A stretch of 64,000 nucleotides of DNA from Mobula birostris (GCF_030028105.1 NC_092384.1:17057629-17121628), one strand, 5' to 3'; numbered from the stretch's first letter, positions 741 through 32,462 are shown. Notes: a model not told the origin generated them from the letters alone. Made by a program: numbers and translations.

Positions 741-1559
741 CAATGTCAAAAGATACACTTGATTAGGTGCCGTCTGTTCATCACATGGACTGTATTTTTA
801 CACCGCGAGCACCCCGTTCCCCCCACGTTTCCGTTTTTTTCATGTGCATCTGTTAGAAAATAATTTTTCCCCCCACCTTAATCCCTTACGATCCCTGATT
901 TTTAACACAGTGATGGGAAATAATAATTTACAGCCGGGTCATTGCGATTTCTCGGTGCCTATTTCCCCATTTCCTCTTGCTTTATATTCAGAAGTTGTAT
1001 CATGCTAGCTGTGTGCTTTCATGATTTCATTCAGGTGCACTATAATAGAGCTTATATTTCTCTCGCGAATTGCTTGAACCCGTTTCCTATAGATGAGGCA
1101 GATGTCCTTTCTTCGAAACATTGTTTCAATGTTCTCGTGAACCGGAATTCTCTAATCCTGTTTGCCTTGCCATTCTCTCCACCAGTATCACTCATGCATA
1201 TTAGTGGCAGTTAATAGAGGGCATCGCCTTGAAATAAGAGAGCAAGAATAAATAAGGTTTTCGAAGCAGGTACATCACGCAGTGGTACAAGAGAGTGTTG
1301 ATTTAATCACAAGAGTTAAAGGGCATTCAAACATGCCCACTAAGAGGCAAAAAAGTGCGATGTAGTCCACGTCCGATCATAAAGAATTATGATCAATACA
1401 CACATCATTGGTCGAAAGGCATTTTCCAGTGCTGTACTTGAATTACTTAACGGTTAAGATTAAACAACGGGCTCTAGCTTATATCGTTTATAAGCAGTAA
1501 ATCGGGAAGGACTAGAATATAGGTAACGCCCCGTGCGAATTCGGAACGGCCCTAGGGCG

Positions 1560-2045
1560 ACATGTGGAAGTGGTAAAGGACTGAATGAGAAGGAATCTGA
1601 CAGGAGAGGATATTGGACCATTGGAGAAAATGAAGGAGAAGCAGCATCAAAGCGAGGTGAGGCGAAGAGAAGGGATAAAAAGGGACCCAGAATGGGAAAT
1701 AGAAAACGATGAAAAGTGTACGAGAGAAATTACTGAAAGTTGGAGAAATCATTGATCATATCAGCAGGTTGGAGGCAATAGAGAAGGAATATAAATCCAC
1801 CTATCAAATGCCATCTCTTTACCTCCCCCTCCCCCCACTAATCACCTGCCAGTTTATGCGCCTTTCCCTCCCCTATCTCCTTTTTGTGACTTCATTCCCC
1901 CTTTCTTTCCAGTCATGAAGAAGGATCTTACTCCGAAACATCGACTGTCTGTTTTTCACCATTGATGCTGCCTGACCCACTGAGCTCCGGTAGCACGTTG
2001 TGGGCTTTCCTCGGGTATCTGCAGAATTTCTTGTATCCAAGGCAT
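1560..2045. mobile_element. Penelope-like element 3' fragments in opposite orientations
   Basis: 1560-1795 resembles the reverse of the PLE C-terminal coding end; 1800-2040 carries the PLE 3' end (cgaaacatcgactgt..gatgctgcctgaccc..ctgcagaatttc). Confidence 0.6.
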
Positions 2046-2141
2046 CGACATAGCCTTGACCATGTGACTTCATAAATAATGGTCACCTGCTTATAATATC
2101 CTATGAATTTCTATCTTTCAGGTAGACCACTCTCATTGGCA

Positions 2142-2196
2142 ATGTCGTTGGATGCAAACTTTTCGTGTTTGGCTCTTCTCGCCGCGTTTTGGCCAG
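2142..2196 (+). CDS. Leader (signal peptide) exon
   Basis: MSLDANFSCLALLAAFWP+G, phase-1 donor CAG|GTACGC. An upstream acceptor (ctttcag|, 2121) implies an earlier 5' exon; a candidate donor is CAG|GTACAT at 1269/1270. Conserved in the paralog at 32408-32462. Confidence 0.85.
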
Positions 2197-5100
2197 GTAC
2201 GCTTAATTTTTAGTGCCCAATCTAAGAATCAAATATGCTATAACATTATACATTTGATACCCGCAGCAAATTTAGCAAATATCCATTGTTCTGCCTATTT
2301 TGCCTGTTGATTCTTTGTACAGTGTGTGCAACTGTCTTCATCATTTTCACTTATGCTTTGTCAGTCGCAAAAGTGACTTCGGCCAAAGTGGAACAATTCC
2401 CTCCAATCTTAAAAGTCCCAATCGGTGGAAATGAATCCATGTTCTGCAAATTTCCAATATTACAAGATACTGCTGAAGTTTCGTGGTGGAAGGCGGGTCA
2501 AAAGGCATTTATAGAACCAGACAGCAGAAATCAGTTCAATGTGAAGAAAGGCAGGGGGACATTTACCCTCCTGAATGTGAGATATGCGGACGCCGGCTTG
2601 TATTACTGTCAAGTGAAAAGTCAACAACAAATATTCGGAAATGGAAATGGCTCTCAGCTTATTGTGTTAAGTAAGTGTCTTTATTCCTGGAAGTAGAAAA
2701 TTTTCATCGCTTTGCATTTTGGCAAAAGCAAGATTGCAGAAATGTTGTGAAATGGTATTGCTGGTTTAAGATTTGTGCCACTAGTATGCTTTATACCTTT
2801 TAAAAAAGAAAAATATCATTTTGGCCTTTTTTTCGGATTGTTCTGTTTATTACTTCGATGTGCTTCTGGAGATTGGTTTTTGCTCCACTTATTATTTGGA
2901 CCGTTACTATTTCCAACCATATCTTTGTTATGCCCATATTCCTACACAACGCCCCACCCTGTGCCGCCTTGACCTATTCCTCAACGAGCCCTAACAACTT
3001 TAAACAATCAAAAGCTTTAAACAGCGGATGAACTGAACCACTGAATTTTTAGACGACAATTTGATTCCGGTTAGCTCATTCGATATAGGGAGCTGTAGAC
3101 AAGTTGCGTTGAAAGCAAATCACAAGCCAACTAATTCAAAGCGAAGCATTGTCGAGGTTAAACGACATTCGCCCATTCTTCATCCCGCTTTTATACATAT
3201 CGACGTATTTCGCCGATTTCGATCCAGTAATTGCTTAAACGCATAGCTACAAATATTTATAAGTAATTAATAAACATCGTTCAGTCTGCCAAACTCTCGA
3301 AGAACTTTTGTGGAACGGGGAACATAGAAATACCGTAATCAACAGTTCGGTAAATTCACTGAGGAACATATTCACCTTCCATCTGAAGCCCAAAAGCAAA
3401 CAAAGCCACTTAATTAATATAACCATATAACCATATAACAATTACAGGACGGAAACAGGCCATCTCGGCCCTTCTAGTCCGTGCCGAACTCTTACTCTCA
3501 CCTACTCCCATCAACCTGCACATTCCTTTCCTGTCCACATAGCTGTCCAATTTAACTTTAAACAACACCGAAACTGCCTCAACCACTTCTGCTGGAAGCT
3601 CGTTCCACACAGCTACCACTCTCTGAGTAAAGTAGTTACCCCTCATGTTTCCCCTAAACTCTGAACTCATGTCCTCTTGTTTGAATCTTTTCCACTCTCA
3701 ATGGAAAAAGCCTATCCACGTCAACTCTATCAATCCCCCTCATAATTTTAAATACCTCTATCAAGTCCCCCCCCCCCGCCTCAACCTTCTACGTTCCAAA
3801 GAATAAAGACCCAACTTGTTCAACCTTTCTCTGTAACTTAGGTGAAAATTCTAATAATTTTGCTCTGTACTCTCTCTATTCTGTTGACAACTTTCCTATA
3901 ATTCGGTAATCAAAACCGTACACAACACTCCAAATTTGGCCTCACCAATGCCTTGAATAATTTGAACATTACATCCCAACTCCTATACTTAATGCTCTGA
4001 TTAATAAAGGCCAGCATACCAAAAGCTTTCTTCATCACCCTATCCACATGTGATTCCACCTTCAGGGAACTATACACCATTATTACTAGATCCCTCTGTT
4101 CTATTGCATTCTTCAATGCCCTACCATTTACCATGTATGCCCTATTTTGATTAACCCTACCAAAATGTAACAATTACTGGACGTATGCGTAAAACCTGCA
4201 CAATGAGAAACAACGCTTGCTCCGTTGCTGCTCCACAATGCCGATCCTATAGAAACCAGCATAGTTGTGCAGATTCACTGACTCTCATTTTGCGTTAATA
4301 CAAAATTGAGCAATGAAGAGGCAGAAGTTGGAACAAACATTGTCTGTTTGAAGAAGAAATGAAGTCAATCCCAGCACACGTTAAGTCTACCACGTTCATT
4401 CCAAACAGGTGTGCGTTCCCCACCTGTCTGTCATGTTTATTTGCCCACTGAAACAATTAATAACTGACAAATTCATGGGATTTCAAACCACCGCAATGAT
4501 AGCATTGAGAGTGGTAGCGTAAGACAGAGAATACGTTCGATCAAATAATAGCTAAATATTCTACATCGGTGTTATTATTTTGTAGCTCCACCGACTCCTC
4601 TGAAAATCATTCGTGTTGAAGAAGTATCATCTAAATCCCGGAAACTCATGTGTAAAACTGCAGCATTTTATCCTAAGAAATTAGACATCTTTTGGCGAAA
4701 GAATAATATGGAAATTCTCACCAAAATAGAAACGTCAATACATGAGATTTCAGAAGGATTTTTTGAGGCTTCCAGTACTTTGGAAGATGCGCAGCCTGCT
4801 CAGGGCAAAATGCTTTACACCTGTCTGGTAACTCACGAAACGCTCCAAGTTCCTGCCAGTTTCAGCTATATTATCGAAGAAGGTAAGACCAGAAGCATTT
4901 AAAGCAAACTTCGACCTGAATGAGAATATGCCTGGAGAGCTGTAAAATCACGAGAAAGAAAATGTGAAATCTCACTTTTTTTCAAAGGGGTAAAGTTAAC
5001 ATGTGTACCATTTTTACATTATTTACAGCCTAACGCATGCAAGGAAATGTGTGTGTCAACGACAAAGGTAGAACAAGGAAAGAGATCATGATGAGGGATT

Positions 5101-8100
5101 TTGAGCAGCTAGGGACTAACCTGAAAAGCATAATCGAAAAAAGTGGTAATGTCTAGATTACTACCTGAGCTACGTGCAAATTGGCACAGGGTTAAGAAGA
5201 TTAGACAGTTAAATTCGTAGCTCAGAAATTGGTCTGGGAGAAGTGGGGTTGAATTCATGGGTATCTGGCACCAGTATTGAGGGAGCTGTTCCATTCGGAC
5301 GGGCTCCACCTGAACCGTGATGGGACCTGGCTCCTGGCGAATCACTTAACTAGGGTTGTGGATAGGGTTTTTAAGGTATGTAGCATGGGGGTTGGTTCAG
5401 CAGATTGGAGAAGTATGGATTAAGTAAAAGTGAAAAGTGTGGATAACGATAAAGTAAAAGCAAAAGATAAAAAAAAGCAAAGTGAGGGTAGAATGCAGAA
5501 AAGTAAAGCACATAAAAGACAAAGATCACTAGATTTTAAAGGCACAATGCCTGTAAGGGCATTTTATCTGAATGCTCTTGCTATCCGGAACAAGGATAGT
5601 GAACTTGTGGCACAAATCAGTATAAGAGCGTATGATTTAGTGGCCTATACAGAACCGTGGTTGCAGAATGGAGATAACTGGGAATTAAATACCCAAGGAT
5701 ATCAGGAATACGGGAGGATAGGCAGGAAGGTAACGGAGGTGGGGAAGCGCCCTAAATTAAAGATGAGAGCAGGGCGATAGAGAGAGACAATATAAGATCT
5801 CAGGAGCAGAATGTTGAATCCGCCTGGGTAGAGATTAGGAATAGTAAAGTGAAAACAAACGTTGGTGAGAATTGTCTATAGGCCACCAAATAACACAATT
5901 ACAGTGGCACGGGCAATAATCCGAGAAATATCAGAGACATGTAAGAATGGAATAGTAAGTATCGTGGACTTTAACTTGCACATGGATTAGGTGAATTAAG
6001 TTGGTCGAGGCAGTCTTGAGGAGGACTTGCGAGAATCCATACATGCTAGCTTTCTTCAACAGCATGTTGCTGAACCTACAAGGGAACATGCTATCTTGCA
6101 TCTAGCGCTGCGCAATGAGACAACTAAAATTACCAATCTTGTAGTTGGGGATCCTCTTGGAAAGAGTGATCACAGCATGACATTCTTATACACATGTAGG
6201 GCGCAATAATTCGATCTAACCTCAGTATATTATACCTACAAGGGCGACAACAAAAAAGATGAGAGAAGAGATGGATAATGTCAATTGGGAGCACAGGCTA
6301 TATGGTGGGACGTTTGAAGAACAGTGGAATACTTTCCAAGAGATTCTTCACGATGCTCAATAGCAGTATATTCCAGTTAAAAGCAAGGACAGTAAGTGCG
6401 GGGAAAGCCAGCCTTGGATAACTGAGGAAATTAAACAATAGACAATAGGCAATAAGTGCAGGATTAGGCCATTATGCCCTTCGAGCCAGAACCGCCATTC
6501 ACCGTGATCATGGCTGATCATCCACAATCAGTAACCAATACTTGTCTTATCCCCATAACACTTTGATTCCGCTATCTTTAAGAGCTCTATCCATCTCTTT
6601 CTTGAAAGCATCCAGAGAATTGGCCTCAACAGCCTTCTGGGGCAGAGCATTCCATACACTCACCACTCTCTGGATGAAAACGTTTTCCCTGAACTCCGTT
6701 CTAAATGGCCTACCCATTATTCTTAAACTGTGGCCTCTGGTTCTGGACTCATCCATCAGCGGGAACATGCTTCCTGCCTCCAGCGTGTCCAATCCCTTAA
6801 TTTTATATGTTTCAATAAGATTCCCTCCCAGCCTTCTAAATTCCAGAGTATACAAGTCCAGACGCTCTAATCTTTCGACATATGACAGTCCCGCCATCTC
6901 GGGAATTAACTTTGTAAACCTACGCTGCACTCCCTCAATAGCAAGAATGTCCTTCCTCAAATTTGGAGACCAAAACTACACACAGTACTCCAGGTGTGGT
7001 CTCACCAGGGCCCTGTACAGCTGCAGAAGGACCTCTTTGCTCTTATACTCAATTCCCCTTGTTATGAAGGCCAGCATGCCATTAGCTTTCTTCACAGCCT
7101 GCTGTACTTGCATGCTTGCTTTCAGTGACTGATGTACAAGAACACCTAGATCTCGTTGTACTTCCCCTTTTCCTAACTTGACTCCATTTAGATAATAGTC
7201 TGCCTTCCTGTTCTTACAACGAATTTGGACAACCTCATATTTATCCACATTAAACAGCATCTGCCCACTCACCCAGCCTGTCCAAGTCACCCTGCATTCT
7301 CATAACATCCTCCTCACATTTCACACTGCCACCCAGCTTTGTGTCATCGGCAAATTTGCTAATGTTACTTTTAATTCCCTTATCTGAATCATTAATATAT
7401 ATTGTAAACAGCTGCGGTCCCAACACTGAACCCTGCGTACCCCACTGGTCACCGCCTGCCATTCTGAAAGGGACACATTAATCGCTACTCTTTGTTTTCT
7501 GTCAGCTAATTTTCAATCCATGTCCGTACTCTGCCCCCAATGCCATGTGTCCTAATTTTGCCCACTAATCTCCTATGTGGGACTTTATCAAAGGCTTTCT
7601 GACAGTCCAGGTACATTACATCCACTGGCTCTCCTTTGTCCATTTTCATAGTTACATGAAGGCATCAAAGAAGGCATCAAACTAGATGCTAGTGCGTAGA
7701 AAGTGACCACGAGTAGTGAGAAATTGGAAGACTGGGAAAGTTTAAAAAGCAACAAAGAACCACTTAGCAAGAAATGAAGAAAGGGAGGATAGATGATGAA
7801 AGTAAACCAGTGTAAAATATTAAAACGGACAGTCAAAGTTTGAATAATTATATAAAGCGGTGTCCAAAGTGAACGTAGGTCCCTTGGAGGACGAGAAAGG
7901 GAATTGATATTGGATAATGAGCAATTGGCTAAGGCCTTGAATGACTATTTTGTGTCGGGTTTCACCGTGGAGGACACGCCTAACGTGCCGAAGAGAGATG
8001 CTATGGATGCAATGGGAGGTGAGAACCTCGATACAATAGCTATTACTTAAGAGGTAGTGCTGAGTAATTTTGTGGGTCAAAAGATGCACAAATCTCAAGG

Positions 8101-11100
8101 TACTGAAAGAAATAGCAGAGATTATAGTTGTGCTCTGGTGAGAATTTACCAAAATTCACTGGACTCTGGTCAGGTCCCGGCGGATTGGAAGAAGGCGAAT
8201 GACATTCGCCACTGTTCAATAAAAGATGTAGAGAAAAAGCAAGTAACTATAGGCCAGTTGATTAACACCTGTAGTTGGGAAAATGCATGAAGCTGTATTT
8301 AAATAAGAAATTGCGAAGCATCTCTGAAGAAATGGATCCATCAGGCAGACTCAGCATGGGTGAAGCAAAGGCAGGTCCTGTTTGACTGGAGCTTTTTGAC
8401 GATATAACAAGTGCAGTAAATAGAAGGGAGCAGATGGACGTTATAAACTTAGATTTATAGAAGACGTTCGGTAAGGTGCCACATAAAAGACGTATCCATA
8501 AGATAAGAATGTATGGAGTAGGGGGTGATGTATTAGCATGGATAGAGACTCGGCCAGCAAGTAAAAAGCAGATAGTTGGGATACACGTGTGTTCCTCTGG
8601 TTGGCTAGCAGTGGTGAGCGGTGTGCCAGAGAGGTGCAAATATTCACAATATACATGAATGATCTAGAAGAGGGGACCGAGCGCACTGCATCTACGTTTT
8701 GCTGATGACACTAAATTGAGTAAACAAATAAATTGTGCAGAGGATATGGACAGTCTGCAGAGAGATATAGATATGTTTAGTGAGTGGGCAAGAGTCTGGC
8801 CGGTAGAGTACAATGTTGGTAAATGCGAGGTCATCTACTTTGGAAGGAGAATGGAAGATCAGATTATTATTTAAATTGTGCAAGGTTGCAGCGTACTTCT
8901 GTGCTGGGAGTGTTTGTGCATGGATCGCAAAATGTTGATGAGCAGTTGCAGCAGGCTATCAAGAAGGCAAATGGAATGCTGGCCTTCACTGCTGGAGGGA
9001 TTGAATTTGAGAACAAGGAGGTTATGCTGCTGTCTAAGTCGCATGCCATCTTGGTCAATGTCTCCCATCCACTACATAATGTACTGGGTGGGCACACGAG
9101 TACATTCAGCCAGAGGCTCATTCCACCGAGATGCAGCACAGAGCGTCATAGGAAGTCATTCCCGCCTGTGGCCATCAAACTTTACAACTCCTCTCTTGGA
9201 GGGTCAGACATCCTGAGCCAATAGGCTGGTCTTGGACTTATTTCATAATTTACTGGCATAAATTACATATCACTATTTAACTATTTATGTTTCTATAACT
9301 ATTTATTATTTATGGAGCAACTGTAACGAAAACCAATTTCCCCCGGGATTAATAAAGTATGACTATGACTATGACTATGACTAACTGTAAAGGGTACTGG
9401 TGAGGCCGCATCTAGAGTACTGCGTGCAGTTCTGGTGTCCTTACTTGATGAATTATATACTGGAGGCAGTGCAGAGGATGTTCACCAGATTGATTCCGGA
9501 GATGAGAGGGTTAAGCTATGAGGAGAGATTCAGTCGCCTGGGAAAGTTGTTTCCACTGATAGGTGAGACTAGAACTAGGAACATCGCCTCAAGATTCGGG
9601 AGAGTAACCATAGAATGGAAATTAGAAGGAACTTATTTTCTCAAAGAGTGATTAATCTGTGGAAATCTCTGCCCAATGAAGCAGTGGAGTCTACCTCACT
9701 AAATATACTAAAGACAAGGTTGGATATATTTTTGAAGAGCAGGGCAATTCAGCATTATGGGGAAAGGCAGGTGGATGGAGATGAGTCCCTCATCAGATCG
9801 GCCATGATCTTATAGGCTCGATGGGCCAGATGGCCTACTGCTGTTCCTATTTGTTATGTTCTTACGAAATTCCTGCATTCATTCATAGCCTATTACATAA
9901 CAAGCACTTGTATATATTAAAAAAAAATTAAATGAGAAAAAACACAAATGCCAAAAGAGGTATTTCGACAGATGTCGAGGTACATGGTCGATGAAGTAGA
10001 TTTTATCATTACTATTTTCCATGAGGAAATGTGAAAAAGGTAAGGTCTTGCGTGGAGTTCAACAAATCATCGGGAACATGATTTTCTGGTTGTAGAGTGG
10101 TGTTCTGCAGGGGCTGGTATAGGAACTATTTCTTTTCCCACGATATGTCAATAATTTTAATGACGGAATTGATCGCTTTGTGGCAATGGTTTCAAAAGAA
10201 GGTGGGGTAATATGAAGTATATACTCCAGCAGAATTAGTGTAATAACGACCTGTGGTAATGGCATGAATATTTACTCCGGAGTATAATGCAATTCCATTT
10301 CTTTTCCTATTAGTCCAACCCAGCTCTAGTTTCCTGAAGATTGAGATTTCTTTAAGACTGCCAGAAATTTCACAAATAAATATTGTGACCGGAAGATCTC
10401 TTTATAATGGCCACCACTTTTATTTCTATGTAATATTAGTGACACTGAAAGCAAATGACATGAATGTGATATTATATCGAATACAGTTCAGTTCCATTAC
10501 TTTCTTTATCCAATTGACCGTTGCATACGTTTGTGGAAAGTCAACTATTTTCCGTCGTGCACTTTTTCGCTAATCTTTAGTCATTTGTTGGATAAAAATC
10601 AAGATTTACAAATGGAAGATCCTGAAGAAATGAGTATTTGATAACCCTGGGTAAAATAATTTGAAAAATATATTTTACTTTGATAAAGTGTGTGTAAAGG
10701 ACACACAGTATGTTTGCATTAACTAAAATCTCAAGCGAGAAATAGAATATGTAATTAGAAGATCAGGAATGATGTGAATATTACCTTTTGCACGGTTATA
10801 TCAGCATGACAAAAGACAATTTTATGTAAGGTTGTTCAAAAGGCTCTGTGAATTGAGAATACAATACGTAGATAGGATTCTCGCTGAGAATATTAAGTGG
10901 CAGTTTCCTTCGGCCAGATGTAGATTCCTTGTCGTGATAAAAGTCGGTCCTGAGAGATGACTTCACTCTGTTGGTAGATCTTTGTAATTTCACCTCCTAG
11001 TATTGTGCATGAGTATTCATTGGAAAAATCCGAGATCGCAATCGTTATATTTCATTCAGTTGAGAATCGACGCAGCTGAACAGTGTAGGAGAAGATTAAG

Positions 11101-14100
11101 CAAAATTTTGGAAGTTGGTCACGTTTACAAATAGTCAAATCATATTTATGTTTCAAATGTTTATAAATGATATTTTACTACATCCATTGTTCCATATTCT
11201 GCTCTTTTTTTAACTATTTGCGCAGTCCTACGTCTTTTGCTACCTCTGCATTTAAAACTGGAATTCTCTCGGCAAGTGTCTTTCTTGCATTACTTAATCT
11301 AAACCTGCCCGTTTGTACCCCCCCCCCACGGTTTTAATCAGGTATCTTGTCGCTTCTCATACATGGTTCGGATTATGTTTTTTAATATTCTATTAATGCA
11401 TCTTGTAAAGTTTTGTGAAAGTAAAAAGTCATTTTCTCTTGTTTGCCAGTGGGATCTACTGAGACAGTTTTCGAGTGACAGTTTGAAAAGAAACGATGTC
11501 ATTTCGAATCTGCCATCAAACTATCCACAAAGACATCGTAAAAAGATAAACTCTCTTAATTCAAATAAAAAAATACTTACGGTAAAGAACTAAAACACAA
11601 ACAAGAGAATATCTGTAGATGCTGGAACTGCAATCAACACACACTAAATGTTGCAGGAACTCAGCAGGCCAGGCAGCACCAGTCCTGCCAAGAGTCTCGC
11701 CCGAAACGTAGACTACTTTTCCCCACAGCTGGTGCCTAGCCTGCTGAGCTCTTCTGGCATTTCGTGTGTGTTGCACTGGAAAGAACCACGATGCAAGATT
11801 ATCTGTTCGCTCCATAAGTCCCATCATCACATTAAAACTCGTGTCATACTGCGTCTCTTGCCTGAATTACCAATTAAAATGCTCTAATTTCTTGTCTCAC
11901 GGTCTCTGTAAATTTATATAAGTTTCACAGCTTCTTCTTTTTTTTTTTACATGGTCCAGAACACAAGAATAAACCTCTGATTCTTGGATGTGCATTGGGC
12001 GGAGTGGCAATTGTAATTCTGATTATAATTTTCGTAACAAGCGGAGTTAACAGAAAACGGTGGTAAGAACATGAATGATTTGACAAGCATTTCAATTTAT
12101 TACCTCTACAGATTGAAAAGAGAGATGATAATGAAAGAATCAAGATTTCCAAGACATTACCCAGTTCACATTGGGCAATGCTAATTATAAATAACAATAT
12201 AATTTTACATTCCCGTTCAAGTTATCCGATCATCCCTCGCACCTACGATTTTCAGTCACTTGGGGTTTGGGTTTTCAGGCCGTGACTTCCAGCGGCGAAT
12301 TTACACAAGTAATAATAATCTTACTGCTGTAGTTTCGTTGTTTTGAGATATAACATTCTGATACTATAATGCCGCCACTCTGCTCTTTCAATCAAAATCT
12401 ATATCCACCACATTCATAAAGGGTCATGCACAACACATTTCATGGCCACAATGTGCGCTGATACTATTTTGAATATCTGTCAAGAGTTGCAACTTTCGGC
12501 AAGAAATATGATTGCAATCCAATGCGCAACTTTAAATTTTCTACCATTACCGTTATTATTTAAGTTGTTGTATAATTTTAAACCCATTAGCCATTAAAAC
12601 AATTTCTGAGGAAGCAAGTCAGAGCGGAGAATTTGTAGGTGAAACAGCTTTTATTTTTGCTTCTGAGAACGATATATTAGAAACATAGAAAATCTACAGC
12701 GCAGTACAGACCCTTCGACTCACAAGGCTGTGCCGAACATATCCTTACATTAGAAATTACCTGGGATTACCCATAGCCCTCTACTTTTCGGAGCTCCATC
12801 TATCTGTCCAGGAGTCTCTTAAAAGATCCTATCGTTTCTGCCTCCACCGCCGCCGCCGGCAGCCTATTCCACGCACTCACCACTCTCTGAGTGAAAAAAA
12901 AACTACCTATGACATCTCCTCTGTACCTACTTCCATGCACCTTAAAACTGTGCCCTCTCGTGGAAGCCATTTCAGCCTTGGGAAAAAGCCTCTGACTACC
13001 CACACGATCAATGCCTCTCATCATCGTATACACGTATATCAGGTCACCTCACATCCTCCGTCACTCCAAAGAAAAAACGCCGAGTTCACTCAACCTGTTC
13101 CCATAATGCATGCTCCCCAATTCAGGCAACATCTTTGTAAATCTGCTCTGCAATCTTTCTAAGGTTTTCACATCATTCCCACAGTGACGTGACCAGAACC
13201 CAGCATAGTACTCCAGGTGTGGTCTGACCTGTTATCAATATAGCTGCAACATTACCTCTTGGCTCCTAAACTGAACTGCACGATTGATGAAGGCCAATGC
13301 CCCGTATGCTTTCTTAATCAAAGTGTCAACCTGCGCAGCAGCTTTCGGTGTCCTACGTATAGACTCGGACCCAAATTTTCTTCTGATCCTCCACACAGCC
13401 AAGAGTCTTAGCATTAATACTACATTCTGTCATCACATTTGACCGACCAAAATGAACTACCTCACAGTTATCTGGGTTGAACTCCATCTGCCACTTCTCA
13501 GCCCAGTTTTGCATCCTATCAATGTCTTGCTGTAACCTCTGATAGCCCTCCACTAAATGCACAACACCTCCAACCATTGTGGCATCAGCAGACTTACTAA
13601 CTCATCCCTCCACTTCTTCATCCAGGTCATTTATAAAAATCAGTAAGTATAGGGATCCCAAAACAGATCCCTGAGGCAAGCCACTGGTCACCGACCTCCA
13701 TGGAGAATATAACCCGTCCTCAACCACTCTTTGTCTTCTGTGAGCAAGCCAATTCTTGATCCACAAAGCAAAGTCCCCTTGGATCCCATGTCTCCTTACT
13801 TTCTCAAGAAGCCTTGCATGGAGTACCTTGTCAAATCCCGTCCCCATTGATGATGCAAATATCATCGCCAGAGGCTCACCAGTCTCCTCCCTCGCCTCCC
13901 GCAGTAGCTTGGTGTACATCTCGTCCGGTCCCGGTGACTTATCCAATTTGATGTTTTCCCAAAGGTCCAGCACATCCGCTTTCTTAACATCTCCATGCTC
14001 ATGCTTTTCAATCCGCTGTAAGTCATCTTTACAATCACTAAGATCCTTTTCTGTGGTGAATATTGAAGCAAAGCAGTCATTAAGTACCTCTGCTATCTGC

Positions 14101-17100
14101 TTTGTCTCCATATACACTTTAGCACTGTCACACTTGATTGGTCCTATTCTCCAACGTCTTATCCTTTTGCTCTTCACATACTTTTTGGTAGAGGAAGATT
14201 ATGATCAATTACAACCTAGGCATGGATATGTCTGTGAGTGCATGAGAACCGATGACAATCTGAGTTGTACAACGCTGCTTCAATGGTCCGTAGTTCCCGA
14301 GGAGTGCAAAGGTGACAGTTGTCCCTGCGTAAGCTGTTGGAGAAAGGAGGAAAAAGCAAATAACTGCGGAAGGAAAAAAAAAGATGACGAGAAAGCTAAA
14401 TAGCATGGGAACCAGGGTTAGCCAGGCGACTGAACACGACAGCACCGAATTAGTTTAGTATAATATCAGAAGATGATAGTGGAGATTTCCTATTCAAAAA
14501 TGAAGGCCTGCAATTGCTGATGTACTGAAGAGGGCAGTTCAGGTTTCAGTACTGTTTGTCATTTAGTTCCGAACCACCTAAAAGGATAATATTGTTAACA
14601 TCTTTAATACCTTCGGGGAGGCAACGAAATTCCTGATGCAATAGAAAGCAAAAGCTAACCAAGACAATGAACTGGGAAATGGTCCTTCAATTTCAGATAT
14701 GATTTAACTTGGACAATGGCGAAGTGTTGCATTTTGTTTGGTTAAAATAAATCTGGAATTACACAGTAACTTGCCCTGGGGTTTGAAGTAGAACGCAGGG
14801 ACTGAGGGCAAGTGGCGACGGAGGTGGACAGAAAGGTATAGAAGGTGTTTGTCACAATTCACACAACAGTGGGGGCAATGTGTGCAGGGTCTGGACTGTC
14901 CTGTTATACTATACACGTCGTTAGTGAAACAAGAAGAGTATTCTGTTCGTTACTGATCGCCCAGCTATAGAAAACTCATGACAGTCCTTAACACAATGCA
15001 GAAAGGACTTACGAGTTTGTTATCAGGACAGCAAGCTTTTAGCTGTAGCGAGAGGCTGGGGCTATTCTTTCATGAGTACAAGAGGTTGAGAGATGACCTT
15101 ATATAGGAATATAAAATGGCGAGGGGGGTAGGCAGACCTAGGTTACAGTTTTTTACCCAGGATAAATTAATCGAAATCAGAATACAGCAATTCAAGGTGT
15201 GATAGAAAATATTTGAAATGGCTCTAGGGAAGGTTTTCAACAAATAGGAGCTTGGTAAAAGTAAAATGTACTAGATGGGTTCGGTAGCAATGTGTGCAAT
15301 ACAGTTAGATTGGTATGTTAAGTAATGTTGAGACCAAAAGGATTTCAAGAGACAAAAATGGTCCTCTGGGAGACCAGAATGATAATCTACGCATGGAGCC
15401 AAAAGAGAATGGGGAGATCTTAAATGTATTTTTTGATCTGTATTTACTCGGGAGCTGGACACAGGGTCTGTAGAAGTGACGCAAAAGAACATTGAGGCCA
15501 TGGTCTTGTATTTCCTCATTCAAATCTTCGAAAATTCCGTCCTGGACGAAAGGGAAACCAGCATGACTTATTACTGTATGCTCCTTCTTCCCTTCACTTA
15601 TCTCCAGCTATCTAAGGTACTCTCCGTCCCATCCAACACGGTACCTTTAGTTCCCAGTATACTTACTTTCCGCATATGTCAAACATTTTCTCCAAATGCT
15701 CGTTAAAGAATACTCACATCAGTAACAGAAGAAATTTTGCAGAGTTGCAGGCAATCCAGAACAACACACACAAAATTGTAAAGAAACTTAGCCGGGAATG
15801 AAGCATATATGGAAGAGAATAAACAGTCGATGTTTCGGGCCAAGACCCTTCATTAGCATTGGAAACGAAGAGGGAAAATGCCAGAATATAAAGATGGGGG
15901 AGTGGAAGTAGGTCCAACTAGAAGTTCATGGTTAAACCCCGGTGAGTGGGGGAGAGGCGATGAACTAAGAATCTGGGAGATGACAGAAGGAAAAGGAAAA
16001 TACTGTAGAATAAGGAGTTTGATAGGATATTAAATTAGAGCTTGGGAGAAAGGGAAGGAGGAAGGGCACCATAGAAAGGATATAGGTAGGTGAGGAGAAG
16101 AAGTAGGAGGCCAGAGTGTGGAACAGAAGAAGAGGGAAGGGAGAGAGAAAAATTAATGAAAGAAGAAATCCGTGTTCATGCCTCAGGCTGGAGGCTACCT
16201 AGACTGAAAATGAGGCGTTTATCCTCCACCCTAGGAGTAGCCTCATGGTGGCAGAAGAAGCCGAGAACCAAAATATCGCGACAAGAATGGGGATAGGAAG
16301 AGCAATGACTGGCTACCGGAATTTCCACTTTTTGTGGATGCAGTGGAGATGCTTGAAAAAGTGATCCGCTAATTTATATTATGTCGCACCAACGTAAAGT
16401 TGGTCGCGTCGGAGGTACCGGACAGAATAGACAAGCATAATAGATTCGGAGATGAATGTGTTACCTCACCAGGACTGACTATTTAGGGCCCTGAATGGCG
16501 CTGAAAAATTATATATCTCAAGTATAATTTTCATGTTGTCTTGGCCTGACAGGAACATTTTCCTTCTATTTGGATTTACATTTTTGATTCGAAACCAAAT
16601 GCTGTCTTCACCCAGGGATCTGCTCACGTTAGTACAGGTTTGAGAACACTTCATAGTCATTTAAAGAGGAAAATCAGTTTAGAATCTACCTCGGTGTTGT
16701 AATTCATCACAAAAATTTAAAAAAAGCCTTTTTTCATAGCGAGTCCACTTCTATTTTAAGGGTATGTTCAGATACATAGAAACAACATTGACAAATGTAG
16801 TTCTATATACCTTAACGAGGTGCTTTTAGAAACCTTGGACGCATTGGTAATCACTTTTCAATGTTCTATAGAGTCAGGATCAGTTCCTGTGGATTGGAGG
16901 AGGGTGGCTAATATTGTGCCACTTTTCAAGAAAGCAGGGAGAGAGAAAACGGGGAATTATAGACCGGTTAGTGTGACGTCAGTAGTGGGAAAGATGCTGG
17001 AGTCAATAATAAAAGATGAAATTACTACACATTTTGATAGCAGTAACAGGATAGGTCCGAGTCAGCATGCATTTACGAACGGGAAATCGTGCTTGTCTAA

Positions 17101-18796
17101 TCTTCTGGAATTTTTTGAGGATGTAACAATGAAAATGGACAAGGGAGAGCCAGTGGATATATCGTACCTGGACTTTCAGAAAGCCTTTGATAAAGATCCA
17201 CAGAGGAGATTAGTGGGCAAAATTAAGGCACATTATATTGGGGGCAGAGTAGTGACATGGATTGAAAATTGGCTGGCTGACAGGAAACAAAGAGTAGCGA
17301 TTAACCGGTCGCTTTTGGAATGGCAGGTGGTGACCAGTGGGGTGCCGCACAGTTTACAGCTGGGACTGCAGCTGTTTACAATATATATTAATGATTTAGA
17401 AAAAGGGATTAAAAGTAAAATTAACAAATTTGCAGATGACACAAAGCTGGGTGGCAGCTTTGAAATGTGAGGAGGATGTTATGATAATGCAGGGTGACTT
17501 GGACAGGCTGGGTGAGTGGACCGAAGCATGGCAGACGCAGTTTAATGTGGATAAATGTGAGGTTATCCACTTTGGTGGTAAGAACAGGAAGGCAGATTAT
17601 TATCTAAATGGAGTCAAGTTAGGAAAAGGGGAAGTGCAACGAGATAGAGGTGTACTTGCACATCAGTCAGTGAAAGCAAGCATGCAGGTACAGCAGGCAG
17701 TGAAGAAAGCTAATGGCATGCTGGCCTTCATAACAAGGAGAATTGAATATAGGAGCAAAGACGTCCTTCTGCAGCTGTACAGGGCCCTGGTGAGACCACA
17801 CCTGGAGTATTGTGTGCAGTTTTGGTCTCCAAATTTGAGGAAGGACATTCTTGCTATTGAGGAGTGAAGCTTAGATTCACAAGGTTAATACCCGGGATGG
17901 CGGGACTGTCATATGTTGAAATATTGGAGCGACTGGGCTTGTATACACTGGAATTTAGAAGGATGAGAGGGGATCTGATTGAAACATATAATATTATTAA
18001 GGGATTGGATACGTTGGAAACGCTGGAGGTAGGAAACATGTTCCCGCTGATGGGTGAGTCCAGAACCAGAGCCACAGTCTAAGAATAAGGGGTAGGCCAT
18101 TTAGAATGGAGTTGAGGAAAAACTTTTTCACCCAGAGAGTGCTGGATATGTGGAATGCTCTGCCCCAGAAGGCAATGGAGGCCAAGTCTCTGGATGCTTT
18201 CAAGAAAGAGATGGATAGAGCTCTTAAAGATAGCGGAATCAAAGGTTATGGGGATAATTGAGGAACTGGATACTGATTGTGGATGATCAGACATGATTAC
18301 AGTGAATGGCGGTACTGGCTCGAAGGGCCGAATGACCTACTCCTGCACCTATTGTCTGTTAAAATTCCGACTAGATTCCATTATTTTCTGATTCAAATTA
18401 AAATAATTCTCAACCCTTCTCCATGTATTCGCTCATGACAGGCTAGGCAAGGTTCTCGGCCCGAAAAGTCGACTGTCCTTTCCTTTCCATTGATGCCACC
18501 TCACGCTTTGAGCGCTGTGTAAACAAAATGTTTCTCTTGACATTGATATTGCTTTGAGTTTTTCTGTACTACTGTGAAGTATAACTGATTCCGCAATCGA
18601 TATAACCAAAAATTAAAATGTTAGAATTGTATTTTATTTTGACGTTCTGATGACCCTTTACTTTTTTGTCTTTGCAGAGTGCTCAAGCTTTAGAATAGAA
18701 ACACGGACTTTGCAGAACAACATGAGAAACTTTTATTTCGGAGGAAGAGGATTTGAAGTCACTTATTTTAGCATTGAGCCATTGTCTGTAACCTAA
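2142..18796 (+). CDS. Gene model: non-rearranging VJ-C1-TM(-ITIM) IgSF receptor (NKp30/NCR3-type V + C1-set), 7 coding exons, 326 aa
   Basis: Exons 2142-2196, 2365-2670, 4586-4882, 11960-12062, 12256-12308, 12591-12638 and 18678-18796 all have AG/GT boundaries and compatible phases (1,1,1,2,1,1). They sum to 981 nt (327 codons) with no internal stop, and AATAAA follows 15 nt after the stop. L/V/C1/TM are solid; the three tail exons are inferred. Confidence 0.75.
2365..2670 (+). CDS. V-set Ig domain exon with germline-joined J-like segment
   Basis: 306 nt, phase 1-1 (ttgtcag| ... a|gtaagt). VAKVTSAKVEQFPP..SMFCKF..VSWWK..TFTLLNVRYADAGLYYCQVKSQQQIFGNGNGSQLIVL: both canonical Cys, Trp, DxGxYYC and a GxGNGxxLxV G strand as in NKp30-type V domains. 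N-glycosylation sequon NES. Confidence 0.95.
3417..4170 (-). mobile_element. CR1 LINE 3' fragment in V-C1 intron
   Basis: ORFs 3410-3670 and 3910-4173 (LHFGRVN..KKAFGML..RPNLECCVRF), (CCATATAA) tail. Absent at the matching position of the paralog. Confidence 0.9.
4586..4882 (+). CDS. C1-set Ig domain exon
   Basis: 297 nt, phase 1-1 (tttgtag| ... g|gtaaga). PPTPLKI..LMCKTAAFYPKKLDIFWRKN..FEASSTL..YTCLVTHETL: C-x4-FYP, W and YTCxVxH motifs diagnostic of C1-set. Confidence 0.95.
6436..7657 (-). mobile_element. Younger CR1 LINE nested in the older CR1
   Basis: TQGSVLGPQLFTIYIND..FADDTKLGG, RPHLEYCV, RKDILAIEGVQRRFT; (CAATAGA) tail at 6436. Confidence 0.9.
9036..9381 (+). mobile_element. Rex1/Babar-type LINE 3' fragment
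   Basis: SHPLHNVL..RLIPPRCSTERHRKSFPPVAIKLYN followed by a (GACTAT)n tail. Confidence 0.7.
11590..11780. mobile_element. Short Penelope-derived terminal fragment
   Basis: gatgctggaact..ggaactcagcaggccaggcagca..cgaaacgtagact..ctgctgag, the recurrent PLE terminal repeat. Confidence 0.6.
11960..12062 (+). CDS. Transmembrane exon
   Basis: Long poly-pyrimidine tract then ccag|; the phase-1 frame gives EHKNKPLILGCALGGVAIVILIIIFVTSGVNRKR, a hydrophobic helix with no charged residue, a GxxxG (GCALG) and a basic stop-transfer sequence. Donor TG|GTAAGA (phase 2); read-through gives ..RKRW*. Confidence 0.85.
12256..12308 (+). CDS. Putative cytoplasmic exon 1
   Basis: gattttcag| ... caa|gtaata, 53 nt; converts phase 2 to phase 1: (C)HLGFGFSGRDFQRRIYT(T). 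Weak similarity to 32705-32745 in the paralog. Confidence 0.45.
12591..12638 (+). CDS. Putative cytoplasmic exon 2
   Basis: cccattag| ... gtag|gtgaaa, 48 nt, phase 1-1: (T)IKTISEEASQSGEFV. The paralog has a positionally matching ag|ccatt acceptor at 33020. Confidence 0.45.
   Translation, partial: PLKQFLRKQVRAENL
12680..14182 (-). mobile_element. CR1 LINE, internally deleted
   Basis: ORFs 13602-14177 (KSPGPDEMY..FDKVLH..QGSVLG), 13353-13577 and 12800-13033; (AAACATAG) tail. Confidence 0.9.
14183..15500 (+). mobile_element. Highly decayed CR1 fragments
   Basis: 14400-14570 aligns by eye to the reverse complement of 180-350 (CR1 RT); further CR1 3' remnants run to about 15500. Confidence 0.55.
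15720..16500 (-). mobile_element. Penelope-like fragment, shared with the duplicate at 33885-34650
   Basis: PLE terminal repeat plus the reverse of the GIY-YIG region; same position in both duplicated segments. Confidence 0.7.
16820..18358 (+). mobile_element. CR1 LINE RT to 3' end
   Basis: ORFs 16820-17470 (VPVDWRRVANIVPLFKK..NYRPVS..DFQKAFD..FADDTK), 17430-17867 and 17864-18082. Confidence 0.95.
18678..18796 (+). CDS. Putative terminal cytoplasmic exon with ITIM
   Basis: Strong acceptor cttttttgtctttgcag|. The phase-1 frame is the only long open one: (E)CSSFRIETRTLQNNMRNFYFGGRGFEVTYFSIEPLSVT*, with VTYFSI matching the ITIM consensus. The acceptor is conserved in the duplicate at 35091. 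Confidence 0.55.
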
Positions 18797-18810
18797 GTGT
18801 CGAGCTCAAA

Positions 18811-18816
18811 AATAAA
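18811..18816 (+). terminator. Polyadenylation signal
   Basis: AATAAA 15 nt after the TAA at 18794-18796. Confidence 0.5.
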
Positions 18817-18949
18817 CAAGTCTGCAAATCGATTTTTTTGTGCTACACGCAAACTTTACCCACAAAGGCTTTCCATGACATCATTAGGCTCGTTCATGCA
18901 GTTCTATTTTCTGCTATTTGCAACTTCCTGTCGACCTGCGTGAAAACTT

Positions 18950-19790
18950 TGTTGCAGGTCTTTAGCTAAAAGAAGAAATTGAATCGTGGTGTACAGACGG
19001 AAGGGGCCCGTCTCGAACATTCGGAACGAAATATTTATGCACCTGTTACTTTCCTTCCTCTTCACAGTACACTTCCTATGGCAACTTGTTGTATACATCC
19101 AAACTCATCTGTGTAAAAACCCTGCCATGCAGAGTTCTCCTTTAAATATTTCTTCTCTCGATTCAGAACGATGTCCTCTAGCTATAGCTCCCAGGCTTGG
19201 GAAATTGACTGCGAGTATCCACTATATTAATGTCTGTAGCAATATTTATCCAAATCTCATGTTATCCTCCAGCCCGCTGTTCTCCATAGTGAACAACCCA
19301 TTTCTATACAATTCATGAATTCCACCATAGTCTCCCCTTCACGGCAATGTCCCGGTGCATCTATACTGCAATCTTTCTAACTCTACCACGTGCATTCTAT
19401 CTTGTGGTGACCGGAAGTGCACACAACTCTCCAAGTGCGGCCTAGCCAATGGCTACAGCTGCAACATGACCTCTCAACACTTGTCAATACACCGTTAAGA
19501 GGGCAAGTAGGCTAAACGCCCTCTTATCTAATATCCTGATGTCTCGTCTTTTCAGGAGACAATCCATGTGCCCCCTAAGGTTCCTCTGTAAATCAACGCT
19601 TCCGTATACTGTATATTTCCTGTCTGTGTCAATGGTCCAGTAAATCATAAACACAAGAGATTCTGGAGATGCTGAAATCGAGAGCAATAAACACAAAATC
19701 CTGCAGGAACTCAGCAGGTCTGACAGTATTAGTGGAGAGGAATGAACTGTTGGGTTTTCTGGCCGAGGACCTTGATTAGCCTGGTTGCTC
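18950..19790 (-). mobile_element. Decayed CR1 3' fragment and PLE terminal fragment
   Basis: CR1 3'-like text at about 19070-19520; PLE terminal repeat at 19640-19790. Confidence 0.5.
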
Positions 19791-32064: not shown

Positions 32065-32326
32065 CAGCATATGGTTGGAAATATCAACGGTCCAAATAAT
32101 ACGTGGAGCAAAAACCAATCTCCAGGTTCACATCGAAATAATAAACAGGATAATCCGAACGGTAAAAGAGTAAATGATATTTTCCTTTTTCTTACAAAGG
32201 TGTAACGCGAATTGGTGACACAAATTCTTACCCAGGAATACCCTTTCACAACATTTCCGCAAACTTGACTTTACTTAAATTGCAAAGAGTTGAATATTTT
32301 CCACTTCCAGGAACGAAGACACTTAC

Positions 32327-32381
32327 TAAGCACAATCAGCTAAGAGCAACTTCCATATCCGAATATTTGTTGCTGACTTTT
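32327..32381 (-). pseudogene. J-like 3' remnant of the paralog V exon
   Basis: KSQQQIFGYGSCS*LIVL followed by an intact a|gtaagt donor; in-frame TAG; the V part upstream is missing. Confidence 0.9.
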
Positions 32382-32407
32382 GGCTAAACAGACCACGCTC
32401 ATTTGCA

Positions 32408-32462
32408 ACGTGGGTGTATGCAAACGTTCGGTGCGTGGCTCTTCTCGCCGCGTTTTCGCCAG
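32408..32462 (+). pseudogene. Orphan leader exon of the paralog
   Basis: 55 nt like copy 1: (ACG)WVYANVRCVALLAAFSP, start ATG>ACG and donor GT>GC. Intron similarity to 2197-2290 continues to about 32560. Confidence 0.88.

What the first reader, a model, noticed from the sequence alone, without database searches (positions are those of the whole stretch)
2142..12062. Germline-joined VJ + C1 + TM: an antigen-receptor-like chain that does not rearrange
Seen: a single exon encodes the V domain through YYC and a J-like strand (IFGNGNGSQLIV), with no heptamer or nonamer inside or around it. It is followed by a phase-1 C1-set exon and a TM exon. Established: C1-set domains are largely confined to Ig, TCR, MHC, tapasin and a few relatives such as SIRP and B7-H6. 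VJ-type V domains with GxGNGT define NKp30/NCR3-like receptors, and non-rearranging VJ-C1 genes (VJC1/PRARP type) are discussed as models of the pre-RAG antigen receptor. Inference: this is a cartilaginous-fish member of that class. It has no charged TM residue and no extracellular unpaired Cys, so it would not pair like TCR/CD3 or NKp30; the TM GxxxG and TM Cys suggest TM-mediated dimerisation.
Basis: partly seen in the sequence, partly recalled or inferred. Interest (0 to 1): 0.85.

Follow-up and report, generated by a model that had tools for sequence, protein, structure and literature searches.

The report
Tail-less SIRP-like manta ray receptor gene
This is a real, expressed manta-ray gene for a surface protein with a ready-joined antibody-like tip and one antibody-type constant domain, but it is one tail-less copy of a large shark-and-ray receptor family that public annotation already predicts, not a special forerunner of antibodies.

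Summary
RNA contigs confirm the leader, single-exon V+J-like, C1-set and TM exons at the stated coordinates, and no RSS flanks the V exon.

The gene continues past 12062. The TM exon splices directly to a terminal exon at 18678, which creates a TGA at the junction. The product is 253 aa with an 8-residue tail.

That protein is identical to a RefSeq Mobula birostris model misnamed "NCR3 ligand 1-like". It belongs to a family found in rays, sharks and chimaeras, which RefSeq labels inconsistently as SIRP-alpha-, B7-H6-, TCR-beta-, Ig-lambda- or tapasin-related-like.

Canonical members carry a four-tyrosine tail that is collinear with amniote SIRP-alpha tails: 30-45 bits, against at most 13.7 bits in 2000 shuffles. 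Other members have an Arg-bearing TM.

This copy sits one base out of phase with its relatives at the TM exon end, which accounts for the lost tail.

The N-terminal domain is short (54 residues between the cysteines) and looks I-set-like. By fold, the ectodomain is about equally distant from B7, SIRP and Ig/TCR chains.

Earlier follow-ups in this scan reported the same family on other DNA of this genome.

Verdict: a new member of a known kind, of moderate to low interest. I found no paper on the family in the held library.

The parts
2122..2196 (+). Second exon: 5' UTR end plus leader. The CDS runs from ATG 2142 to 2196 (55 nt, phase 1). A 5' non-coding exon of at least 93 nt lies upstream and was not located.
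   Evidence: Sequence. In an RNA contig of X1, record positions 94-169 lie on 2118-2193 and 93 letters lie on nothing in the stretch. Joint 2193>2362 with cut +3, that is 2196>2365, GT..AG.
2365..2670 (+). Single exon for the variable-type Ig domain including the J-like G strand. Cys46 and Cys100; sequons N41 and N113. Phase 1-1.
   Evidence: Pfam Ig_3/I-set/V-set E 3e-7 to 1e-6. RNA joints on both sides. Cys spacing 54.
2631..2666 (+). J-like strand IFGNGNGSQLIV. It fits GxG[T/S]xLxV as G-N-G-S-Q-L-I-V and lies inside the V exon.
   Evidence: Sequence. Family consensus GNGTGSxLxV. Predicted as the F-G hairpin plus G strand (E107-111, E115-121) at high pLDDT.
4586..4882 (+). C1-set constant-domain exon (Cys143, Trp157, Cys200, His204). 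Phase 1-1.
   Evidence: Pfam C1-set 36.3 bits, E 7.5e-9. RNA joint 2670>4586. The contig ends exactly at 4882 and runs on into other exons. Superposes on MHC class II, Ig light chain and IgNAR C domains at rmsd 1.3-2.0 A.
11960..12062 (+). Stalk plus transmembrane exon (103 nt). Uncharged TM with G229-C230-A-L-G233-G234. Ends in phase 2.
   Evidence: Sequence. 103 nt of the 856-nt RNA contig lie between the C1 part and 18678. Predicted helix 224-252.
12061..12061 (+). Extra T relative to relatives at the end of the TM exon. It moves the donor from phase 1 to phase 2.
   Evidence: tblastn places Hypanus P0005 residues 341-374 on 11959-12060 and the contiguous residues 375-411 on 12062-12172, one base out of frame. 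Relatives end the exon with ..KRG or ..SHG. Inferred from proteins; DNA of relatives could not be fetched.
18678..19323 (+). Terminal exon. Its first base completes TGA (12061-12062 + 18678); the rest is 3' UTR. The end at about 19323 is estimated from contig length. Read in phase 1 it would give a 39-aa tail holding the ITIM-like VTYFSI.
   Evidence: The 856-nt contig lies on 18677..19000 at record positions 324-647 and runs on for 323 nt. Sequence, translation. In the phase-1 frame it matches the tail of the Hemitrygon P0161 short isoform.
4883..11959 (+). 7.1-kb intron 3 filled with retroelement fragments. It holds no family exon.
   Evidence: Reverse-transcriptase-like ORFs on both strands. 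tblastn with family proteins finds nothing here.
12063..18677 (+). 6.6-kb last intron. No tail-exon remnants were detected.
   Evidence: Sensitive tblastn with 24 family tails gives nothing better than E 0.2. The RNA contig skips the whole interval.

Best explanation
The locus is an intact, transcribed, non-rearranging gene of a manta ray (Mobula birostris or a very close relative). It encodes a 253-aa type I membrane protein made of a signal peptide, a short variable-type Ig domain with a built-in J-like strand, one C1-set domain, an uncharged TM helix and an 8-residue tail.

It is one member of a chondrichthyan-wide multigene family of V(J)-C1 receptors. Canonical members signal through a SIRP-alpha-like four-tyrosine (ITIM-type) tail. 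Other members carry an Arg in the TM, as activating receptors do.

This copy and its nearest myliobatiform relatives have lost the tail. Here the TM exon is one base out of phase with relatives, so its splice to the last exon creates an immediate stop codon.

Most likely it works as a non-signalling ligand-binding partner of its inhibitory paralogues, either as a decoy or adhesion form comparable to SIRP-gamma. Alternatively it signals only through a partner chain, held by the conserved TM Cys-Ala-x-Gly-Gly motif.

Shown: gene structure, splicing, transcription, family membership and tail loss. Inferred: the ligand-binding role, the decoy or pairing mechanism, and the one-base insertion as the cause of tail loss.
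For: - Exons and phases come from the sequence.
- RNA contigs give the joints 2196>2365 and 2670>4586, then C1 + 103 nt + 18678 onward.
- The spliced product equals P0185 over all 253 residues. Its source names it NCR3 ligand 1-like, Mobula birostris.
- The M. hypostoma orthologue P0186 is 94% identical.
- An exhaustive phmmer search and two word-seeded searches return family members from rays, sharks and Callorhinchus.
- In the tree of 48 ectodomains, this gene groups with P0186. These two join P0002 and P0005 (100/99*) and then Narcine P0010 (100/95*). Only the Narcine member keeps a Tyr-motif tail.
- The TM and tail fall into three classes.
- An HMM of chondrichthyan tails scores amniote SIRP-alpha tails at 30-45 bits. 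The best of 2000 shuffles scores 13.7.
- Tyrosine spacing is 23/13-14/23 in the family and 24-25/17/24-26 in SIRP-alpha.
- The frame offset is seen at 12061.
- AF2 gives mean pLDDT 89.3 with a V-C1-helix layout. The best rigid fit is to rodent SIRP-alpha D1-D2 (TM 0.65-0.66, rmsd 3.9-4.0 A).
Against: - The family has one C1 domain, whereas SIRPs have two. Its N-terminal domain is 8-13 residues shorter between the cysteines than SIRP D1.
- The tail likeness could partly reflect convergence on SHP-binding motifs. Tails of unrelated ITIM receptors were not available as a control.
- This copy has no tail at all, so its link to SIRP rests on its paralogues.
- Function was not tested. Contigs drop rare isoforms, so a minor tailed transcript cannot be excluded.
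- The tail-less state may simply mark early decay.
Confidence: 0.6

Rival explanations
1. The copy is a decaying gene. The frameshift at the TM exon end removed the inhibitory tail, and what remains is transcribed but no longer useful.
For: The frame offset at 12061 puts a stop at the splice junction. ITIM-like codons are stranded out of frame in the 3' UTR. The cluster holds other wreckage: scrambled leader and J-end fragments at 32331-32463. RefSeq gives different C-termini for the two Mobula orthologues.
Against: The leader, V, C1 and TM exons are intact in both Mobula species, at 94% identity. The nearest relatives in M. hypostoma and Hypanus also have intact ectodomains with short tails, and form a starred clade. 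Separate short-tailed members in Pristis and Hemitrygon are also complete. The transcript is correctly spliced and assembled at depths of 13-31.
Confidence: 0.2
2. It is a B7/butyrophilin-type ligand, as its RefSeq name 'NCR3 ligand 1-like' suggests. It would be shown to receptors on other cells rather than acting as a receptor itself.
Confidence: 0.1
3. It is a relic close to the antigen-receptor precursor, of the UrIg/UrIg2 or PRARP kind, or a germline-joined Ig/TCR-type chain.
For: Single-exon VJ-like domain plus C1, split leader and phase-1 exons. The C1 exon hits IgA, UrIg2 (9dmx), Ig light chain and IgM in the PDB sequence search. Ig light chains top the Foldseek PDB list.
Against: - UrIg has three C domains and is secreted; UrIg2 has nine or more C domains (PMC12227049). 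This gene has one.
- UrIg2 matches reach only 8-17 bits per domain.
- Ig light chains fit poorly as rigid bodies (TM 0.34-0.38).
- The V-type domain has I-set length.
- No RSS-bearing paralogue lies in the window.
- The family's signalling parts are those of innate paired receptors.
- Earlier notes of this scan place the MHC-type genes on other pieces of the genome (unchecked).
Confidence: 0.07

Closest known systems
SIRP family (SIRP-alpha, -beta, -gamma; PTPNS1/SHPS-1)
   Same: Non-rearranging N-terminal domain with a J-like G strand, followed by C1-set domain(s) and a single TM. The family has inhibitory members (four-tyrosine tail collinear with SIRP-alpha), activating-type members (charged TM) and tail-less uncharged members. 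The tail-less form is this gene and is comparable to SIRP-gamma as described in PMC12975943. The best rigid superposition is on rodent SIRP-alpha D1-D2.
   Different: It has one C1 domain instead of two. The Cys-Cys spacing of the first domain is 54-59, against 62-67. The SIRP 'YYCVKF' signature is absent. Identity is only 14-22%. The charged TM residue of the activating-type members is an Arg near the outer face with D/E-H at the inner end. Orthology, synteny and CD47 binding were not tested.
NKp30 / NCR3
   Same: The G strand has a GxGNG[T/S] motif carrying a glycosylation sequon, the domain is short and encoded in one exon, and the gene does not rearrange.
   Different: From my own knowledge, NKp30 has no C1 domain and carries a TM Arg for CD3-zeta/FcR-gamma. 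This gene has a C1 domain and an uncharged TM.
B7-H6 (NCR3LG1), B7 and butyrophilin ectodomains
   Different: Identity is only 20-23%, within a flat list of hits. The family's tails and TM types are receptor-like. A J-like motif is present.
UrIg and UrIg2 of elasmobranchs (PMC12227049)
   Same: Non-rearranging single-exon VJ plus C1-type domains, with a split leader, in cartilaginous fish.
   Different: UrIg has three C domains and is secreted. UrIg2 has nine to eleven C domains. This gene has one C1 and belongs to a multigene family with ITIM tails. Sequence likeness is weak. That paper does not mention this family.
PRARP (Fu et al. 2019, J Immunol 202:1992; cited in PMC10751288 and PMC11599192)
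   Same: Those papers list it among non-rearranging VJ-type IgSF genes.
   Different: No comparison was possible. The paper is not held and no PRARP sequence was reachable.

Membership tests
Non-rearranging VJ-C1 receptor (structural class) | Variable-type domain and J-like strand (GxG[T/S]xLxV) in one exon, with no RSS | tested here: met
   The exon 2365-2670 holds YYC and G-N-G-S-Q-L-I-V. The RNA joints flank the whole exon. No heptamer or RSS composite lies near it.
Non-rearranging VJ-C1 receptor (structural class) | Adjacent C1-set domain on its own phase-1 exon | tested here: met
   Pfam C1-set 36.3 bits against a cut-off of 21. Joint 2670>4586.
Non-rearranging VJ-C1 receptor (structural class) | Full V-set size with C' and C'' strands, as in Ig, TCR and SIRP D1 | tested here: not met
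   Cys46-Cys100 spacing is 54, against 62-67 in SIRP D1. The Pfam I-set and Ig_3 matches span most of the domain, while the V-set match covers only residues 52-101. Only 12 residues separate the predicted C and D strands.
SIRP family | One V-set plus two C1-set domains | tested here: not met
   The window holds one C1 exon only, and the RNA contig goes from C1 straight to TM.
SIRP family | SIRP-alpha-type cytoplasmic tail with four tyrosine motifs | tested here: not met
   This gene stops 8 residues after the TM. Paralogues do meet the feature: 30-45 bits against SIRP-alpha tails with 0 of 2000 shuffles as high, and matching spacing.
SIRP family | Orthologous genomic position and CD47 binding | not tested
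   One look-up in Callorhinchus showed only another family member within 10 kb. DNA of ray relatives could not be fetched.
NKp30 / NCR3 | A single Ig domain with no C1, and a TM Arg for adaptor pairing | tested here: not met
   A C1 exon is present and the TM has no charged residue.
B7-H6 / B7 / butyrophilin | Specific kinship of the V and C domains with B7-family members | tested here: inconclusive
UrIg / UrIg2 | VJ followed by three or more C1-type domains | tested here: not met
   This gene has one C1 domain. The definitions come from PMC12227049.
PRARP | Sequence kinship with chicken PRARP genes | not testable with these tools
   The paper is not held, and no PRARP sequence could be obtained by name.
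Germline-joined Ig light chain or TCR chain | Clusters with Ig/TCR V and C domains; RSS-bearing paralogues nearby; no ITIM or Arg-TM paralogues | tested here: not met
   Nearest relatives are TM receptors with ITIM tails or Arg-TM anchors. There is no second V or C1 and no RSS in the window. Rigid fit to light chains is TM 0.34-0.38.

The most novel reading that the evidence does not exclude
The chondrichthyan V(J)-C1 family is the ancestral form of the SIRP lineage, with one C1 domain, dating SIRP-type paired receptors to the base of jawed vertebrates. Tail-less members such as this one pair through the conserved TM Cys-Ala-x-Gly-Gly motif with ITIM-bearing paralogues. That would give a two-chain V-C1 receptor laid out like a TCR or Ig heterodimer but not rearranging. 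The expanded CD47-like five-pass proteins that earlier scan notes report in this genome might be its ligands (unchecked lead).
Probability: 0.1. Interest if true: 0.7.

Novelty: new member of a known kind. Interest (0 to 1): 0.35.

Why it matters
Non-rearranging VJ-C1 genes of cartilaginous fish bear on how antigen receptors arose. The two most recent papers read here name UrIg, UrIg2, NKp30 and PRARP as the relevant relics, and the UrIg2 paper does not mention this family.

The work here places this gene in a large, lineage-wide, expressed family with SIRP-alpha-like tails. If the tail homology holds, SIRP-type inhibitory signalling on a V-C1 scaffold is as old as jawed vertebrates.

It also explains the conflicting RefSeq names. 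The ectodomain is roughly equidistant from B7, SIRP, Ig/TCR and tapasin-related proteins.

For this particular copy the value is modest. It gives a corrected annotation and an example of an inhibitory receptor turned tail-less, apparently by a one-base change.

Tried and rejected
- **Germline-joined Ig light chain or TCR.** Rejected, because the relatives are TM receptors with ITIM or Arg-TM parts.
- **NKp30.** Rejected, because this gene has a C1 domain and no TM Arg.
- **UrIg/UrIg2.** Rejected on domain number.
- **Hidden ITIM tail exons between 12063 and 18677.** Sensitive tblastn found nothing better than E 0.2, and the RNA contig skips the interval.
- **Profile searches of the PDB with V-only and C1-only alignments.** Uninformative, because whole-chain scores add up over many Ig domains.
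- **Word-seeded profile search.** It returned only chondrichthyan proteins, so it says nothing about distant relatives.
- **dN/dS and the DNA check of the one-base insertion.** Not possible.
- **Synteny.** One Callorhinchus look-up showed only a second family gene.
- **PRARP.** The term was found only as a citation and the paper is not held.
- **Domain phylogeny against Ig, TCR, B7, NKp30 and UrIg.** Not done. No tool supplied those reference sequences, and I did not type any from memory.
- **The 5' non-coding exon.** Not located. The region 320-403 resembles the N-terminal extension of model P0002, but no donor site is visible there.


Full report
**Observation**

- The leader runs from ATG 2142 to 2196 (55 nt, phase 1).
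- One exon, 2365-2670, encodes a variable-type Ig domain. It runs through YYC (TGT 2607-2609) and the J-like stretch IFGNGNGSQLIV (2631-2666).
- A 297-nt phase 1-1 exon at 4586-4882 carries the C1 hallmarks: FYP after the first Cys, and YTCLVTH.
- The exon 11960-12062 encodes a stalk and an uncharged TM helix.

All splice sites are canonical. Pfam gives Ig_3, I-set and V-set for the first domain (E 3e-7 to 1e-6) and C1-set for the second (36.3 bits, cut-off 21, E 7.5e-9). A motif scan of all six frames finds no other V or C1 exon in the 64 kb.

**Transcription and splicing**

An RNA-labelled run (X1) holds 24% of the sampled words of 2100-5000, which is about the exonic share. Its contigs, with no mismatches, carry the joints 2196>2365 and 2670>4586, both GT..AG.

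An 856-nt contig covers 4776-4882, then 103 nt, then 18677/18678 onward to beyond 19000. The 103 nt match the length of the TM exon. So C1 is spliced to TM, and TM directly to a terminal exon starting at 18678.

The TM exon ends with TG and the terminal exon begins with A. A TGA therefore forms at the junction, and the protein ends ...VNRKR at residue 253.

A further 5' non-coding exon exists, because 93 contig letters upstream of about 2120 lie on nothing in the stretch. I could not place it.

**Rearrangement signals**

No exact heptamer lies within 1500-5000. The only ones in the first 20 kb are at 906 and 13180. Heptamer-spacer-nonamer composites number 4 in the window, against a mean of 1.3 (maximum 5) in block shuffles. 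None is near the V exon. The claim that the gene does not rearrange stands as far as sequence can show.

**Identity**

An exhaustive phmmer search of 1.8 billion representatives with the V exon gave single-domain hits of 84%, 82% and 63% identity, and many weaker ones. By their source names these are proteins of rays, sharks and the chimaera Callorhinchus.

My spliced model is identical over all 253 residues to P0185. Its source names that protein 'natural cytotoxicity triggering receptor 3 ligand 1-like' of Mobula birostris. The M. hypostoma orthologue P0186 is 94% identical. The gene is therefore already predicted in public annotation with exactly this short-tailed structure.

RefSeq names for family members are inconsistent: SIRP-alpha-like, NCR3LG1-like, TCR-beta-like, MHC class II DP-alpha-like, Ig lambda-like, PD-L1-like, CD276 homologue and tapasin-related-like.

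**The family**

In an alignment of 48 members, both Ig-fold cysteine pairs, the WW motif, DxGxYYC, GNGTGSxLxV, the PPTPL linker and the C1 signature are conserved.

Three membrane and tail designs occur:
- a TM with Cys-Ala-x-Gly-Gly followed by a 100-aa tail with three or four tyrosine motifs;
- a TM with an Arg near the outer face and D/E-H at the inner end, with a short tail;
- the Cys-Ala-x-Gly-Gly TM with a very short tail, as in this gene.

In a maximum-likelihood tree of the ectodomains, this gene pairs with P0186. These two join M. hypostoma P0002 and Hypanus P0005 (100/99*) and then Narcine P0010 (100/95*). Only the Narcine member keeps tyrosine motifs in its model. Other short-tailed members (Pristis P0169, Hemitrygon P0170) sit elsewhere in the tree. 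Tail loss is therefore recurrent, as in other paired-receptor families.

**How this copy lost its tail**

Hypanus P0005 aligns to the TM exon at 11959-12060. Its next, contiguous residues align at 12062-12172, one base out of frame. Relatives end this exon with ..KRG or ..SHG, that is in phase 1, whereas this gene ends in phase 2.

The simplest reading is a one-base insertion (T at 12061). I could not confirm it on DNA of relatives, because none was served.

Read in phase 1, the terminal exon would give a 39-aa tail containing VTYFSI. The start of that frame matches the tail of a Hemitrygon short isoform, P0161.

No remnants of the usual intermediate tail exons are detectable between 12063 and 18677. 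An earlier first-reader note (s1-145755) proposes a hidden ITIM tail built from three small exons in this interval. The assembled transcript contradicts that for the main product. Contigs can miss rare isoforms.

**Relation to known families**

*Structure.* The AF2 model is confident (mean pLDDT 89.3).
- Against Swiss-Prot models, the hits B7-H6, CD276, Ig kappa, TCR-beta, SIRP-alpha, PD-L1 and tapasin-related protein all fall at E 5.5e-16 to 1.2e-14 with 14-22% identity. The best rigid fit is to rat and mouse SIRP-alpha D1-D2 (TM 0.65-0.66, rmsd 3.9-4.0 A).
- Ig light chains head the Foldseek PDB list but fit poorly as rigid bodies (TM 0.34-0.38).
- In AlphaFold DB clusters, a single entry scores E 2e-24 at 33% identity, in the family's range (organism withheld by the tool; I read it as a family member). 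Everything else is at E 2e-15 or weaker and 22% identity or less.

The ectodomain is therefore a distinct lineage, roughly equidistant from the known V-C1 families. That accounts for the conflicting names.

*The tail.* An HMM of twelve long chondrichthyan tails scores amniote SIRP-alpha tails at 30-45 bits. The best of 2000 composition-matched shuffles scores 13.7.

The four tyrosines are collinear. Spacing is 23/13-14/23 in the family and 24-25/17/24-26 in SIRP-alpha. The motif types alternate in the same way (xYAxLN/D, xYAQT or xYASI, LTYAxLD/Q, xYAEV or xYASV), and 8-16 residues follow the last tyrosine.

I take this as the best available evidence that the family is SIRP-like. The caveat is that unrelated ITIM tails were not available as a control for convergence.

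*Differences from SIRPs.* The family has one C1 domain rather than two. Its first domain has a Cys-Cys spacing of 54-59 against 62-67. Only 12 residues lie between the predicted C and D strands. That is I-set length rather than full V-set.

**Literature**

- UrIg (VJ plus three C domains, secreted) and UrIg2 (VJ plus nine to eleven C domains, TM) are the described elasmobranch non-rearranging antigen-receptor-like genes (PMC12227049). That paper mentions neither SIRP nor this family.
- PMC10751288 lists NKp30, PRARP and UrIg as VJ genes linked to the MHC.
- PMC11599192 lists CD79, NITR, SIRP, CD8, NKp30 and PRARP as joined-VJ IgSF members.
- The PRARP paper itself is not held.
- Searches for SIRP with cartilaginous fish or shark terms found no description of this family.
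- Earlier follow-up notes of this scan describe the same family at several other places in this genome and reach similar conclusions. I treated them as leads and re-derived the points used here.

**Mechanism**

The parts shown are a secreted-pathway leader, two Ig domains, a TM helix and no signalling tail.

The likeliest role (inference) is a ligand-binding chain that does not signal on its own. It would be either a decoy or adhesion form alongside inhibitory paralogues, like SIRP-gamma among SIRPs. Alternatively it is a chain that pairs in the membrane through the conserved Cys230 and Gly229xxxGly233-Gly234 motif with itself or with a tailed paralogue.

The main rival is early pseudogenisation. 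Against it stand the intact ectodomain reading frames in two Mobula species and in the nearest relatives, and the correct splicing.

**Verdict**

This is a new member, already predicted under a misleading name, of a known kind of system: paired, SIRP-like IgSF receptors. The family as a whole deserves a proper description. This single copy is of moderate to low interest.

Noticed in passing
window 32250-32560: Scrambled remnant of a paralogue. A leader copy lies on the + strand (32390-32463, 84% identical), with ATG changed to ACG and the donor GT changed to GC, followed by intron-1-like sequence. Head-to-head with it, 8 bp away, lies an inverted copy of the J-like end of the V exon (32381-32331, 88%) with its donor and intron. 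That copy holds an in-frame stop. The breakpoint falls right after the codon that follows YYCQV, where a V/J split would lie in a rearranging gene. The V body is missing. This could be a chance inversion breakpoint.
   Followed up: partly
window 53785-53889, minus strand: A cytoplasmic exon of another family member (..TAYASLN..ERVVYSQ), 80% identical to Hypanus P0152 residues 271-305. Its V and C1 exons are not in the window, so a convergently oriented tailed paralogue probably starts beyond the window's end.
   Followed up: partly
window 18678-18800: In the phase used by relatives, the terminal exon reads a 39-aa tail with NFYF and VTYFSI (ITIM-like). In the transcript's own frame it also shows a weak likeness (E about 0.5) to the family's last tyrosine exon, with Phe in place of Tyr (NTDFAEQH). 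Both lie in the 3' UTR of the observed mRNA.
   Followed up: partly
window 15085-15236: A 152-nt contig of run X1 with no mismatches, at low depth (2.1), lies wholly inside the last intron and shows no joint. It may be pre-mRNA, a minor exon or a repeat transcript.
   Followed up: no
window 3361-4233, 13001-14200, 15801-16200, 16801-18400: Intronic stretches with summed contig depths in the hundreds to tens of thousands in all RNA-labelled runs, at 95-99% identity. These are abundant retroelement families, and reverse-transcriptase-like ORFs lie on both strands nearby.
   Followed up: no
window 12062-12172; proteins P0005 (Hypanus) and P0162 (M. hypostoma): The C-termini of these two RefSeq models (..GKNMNDLT..RFPRHY..) are translations of the intron that follows the TM exon. 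They are likely read-through artefacts of gene prediction rather than real tails.
   Followed up: partly
window 42780-43030 and 63724-64000: Tandem arrays: a 25-bp unit repeated 9.9 times, and 52/59/111-bp units running into the window's end.
   Followed up: no
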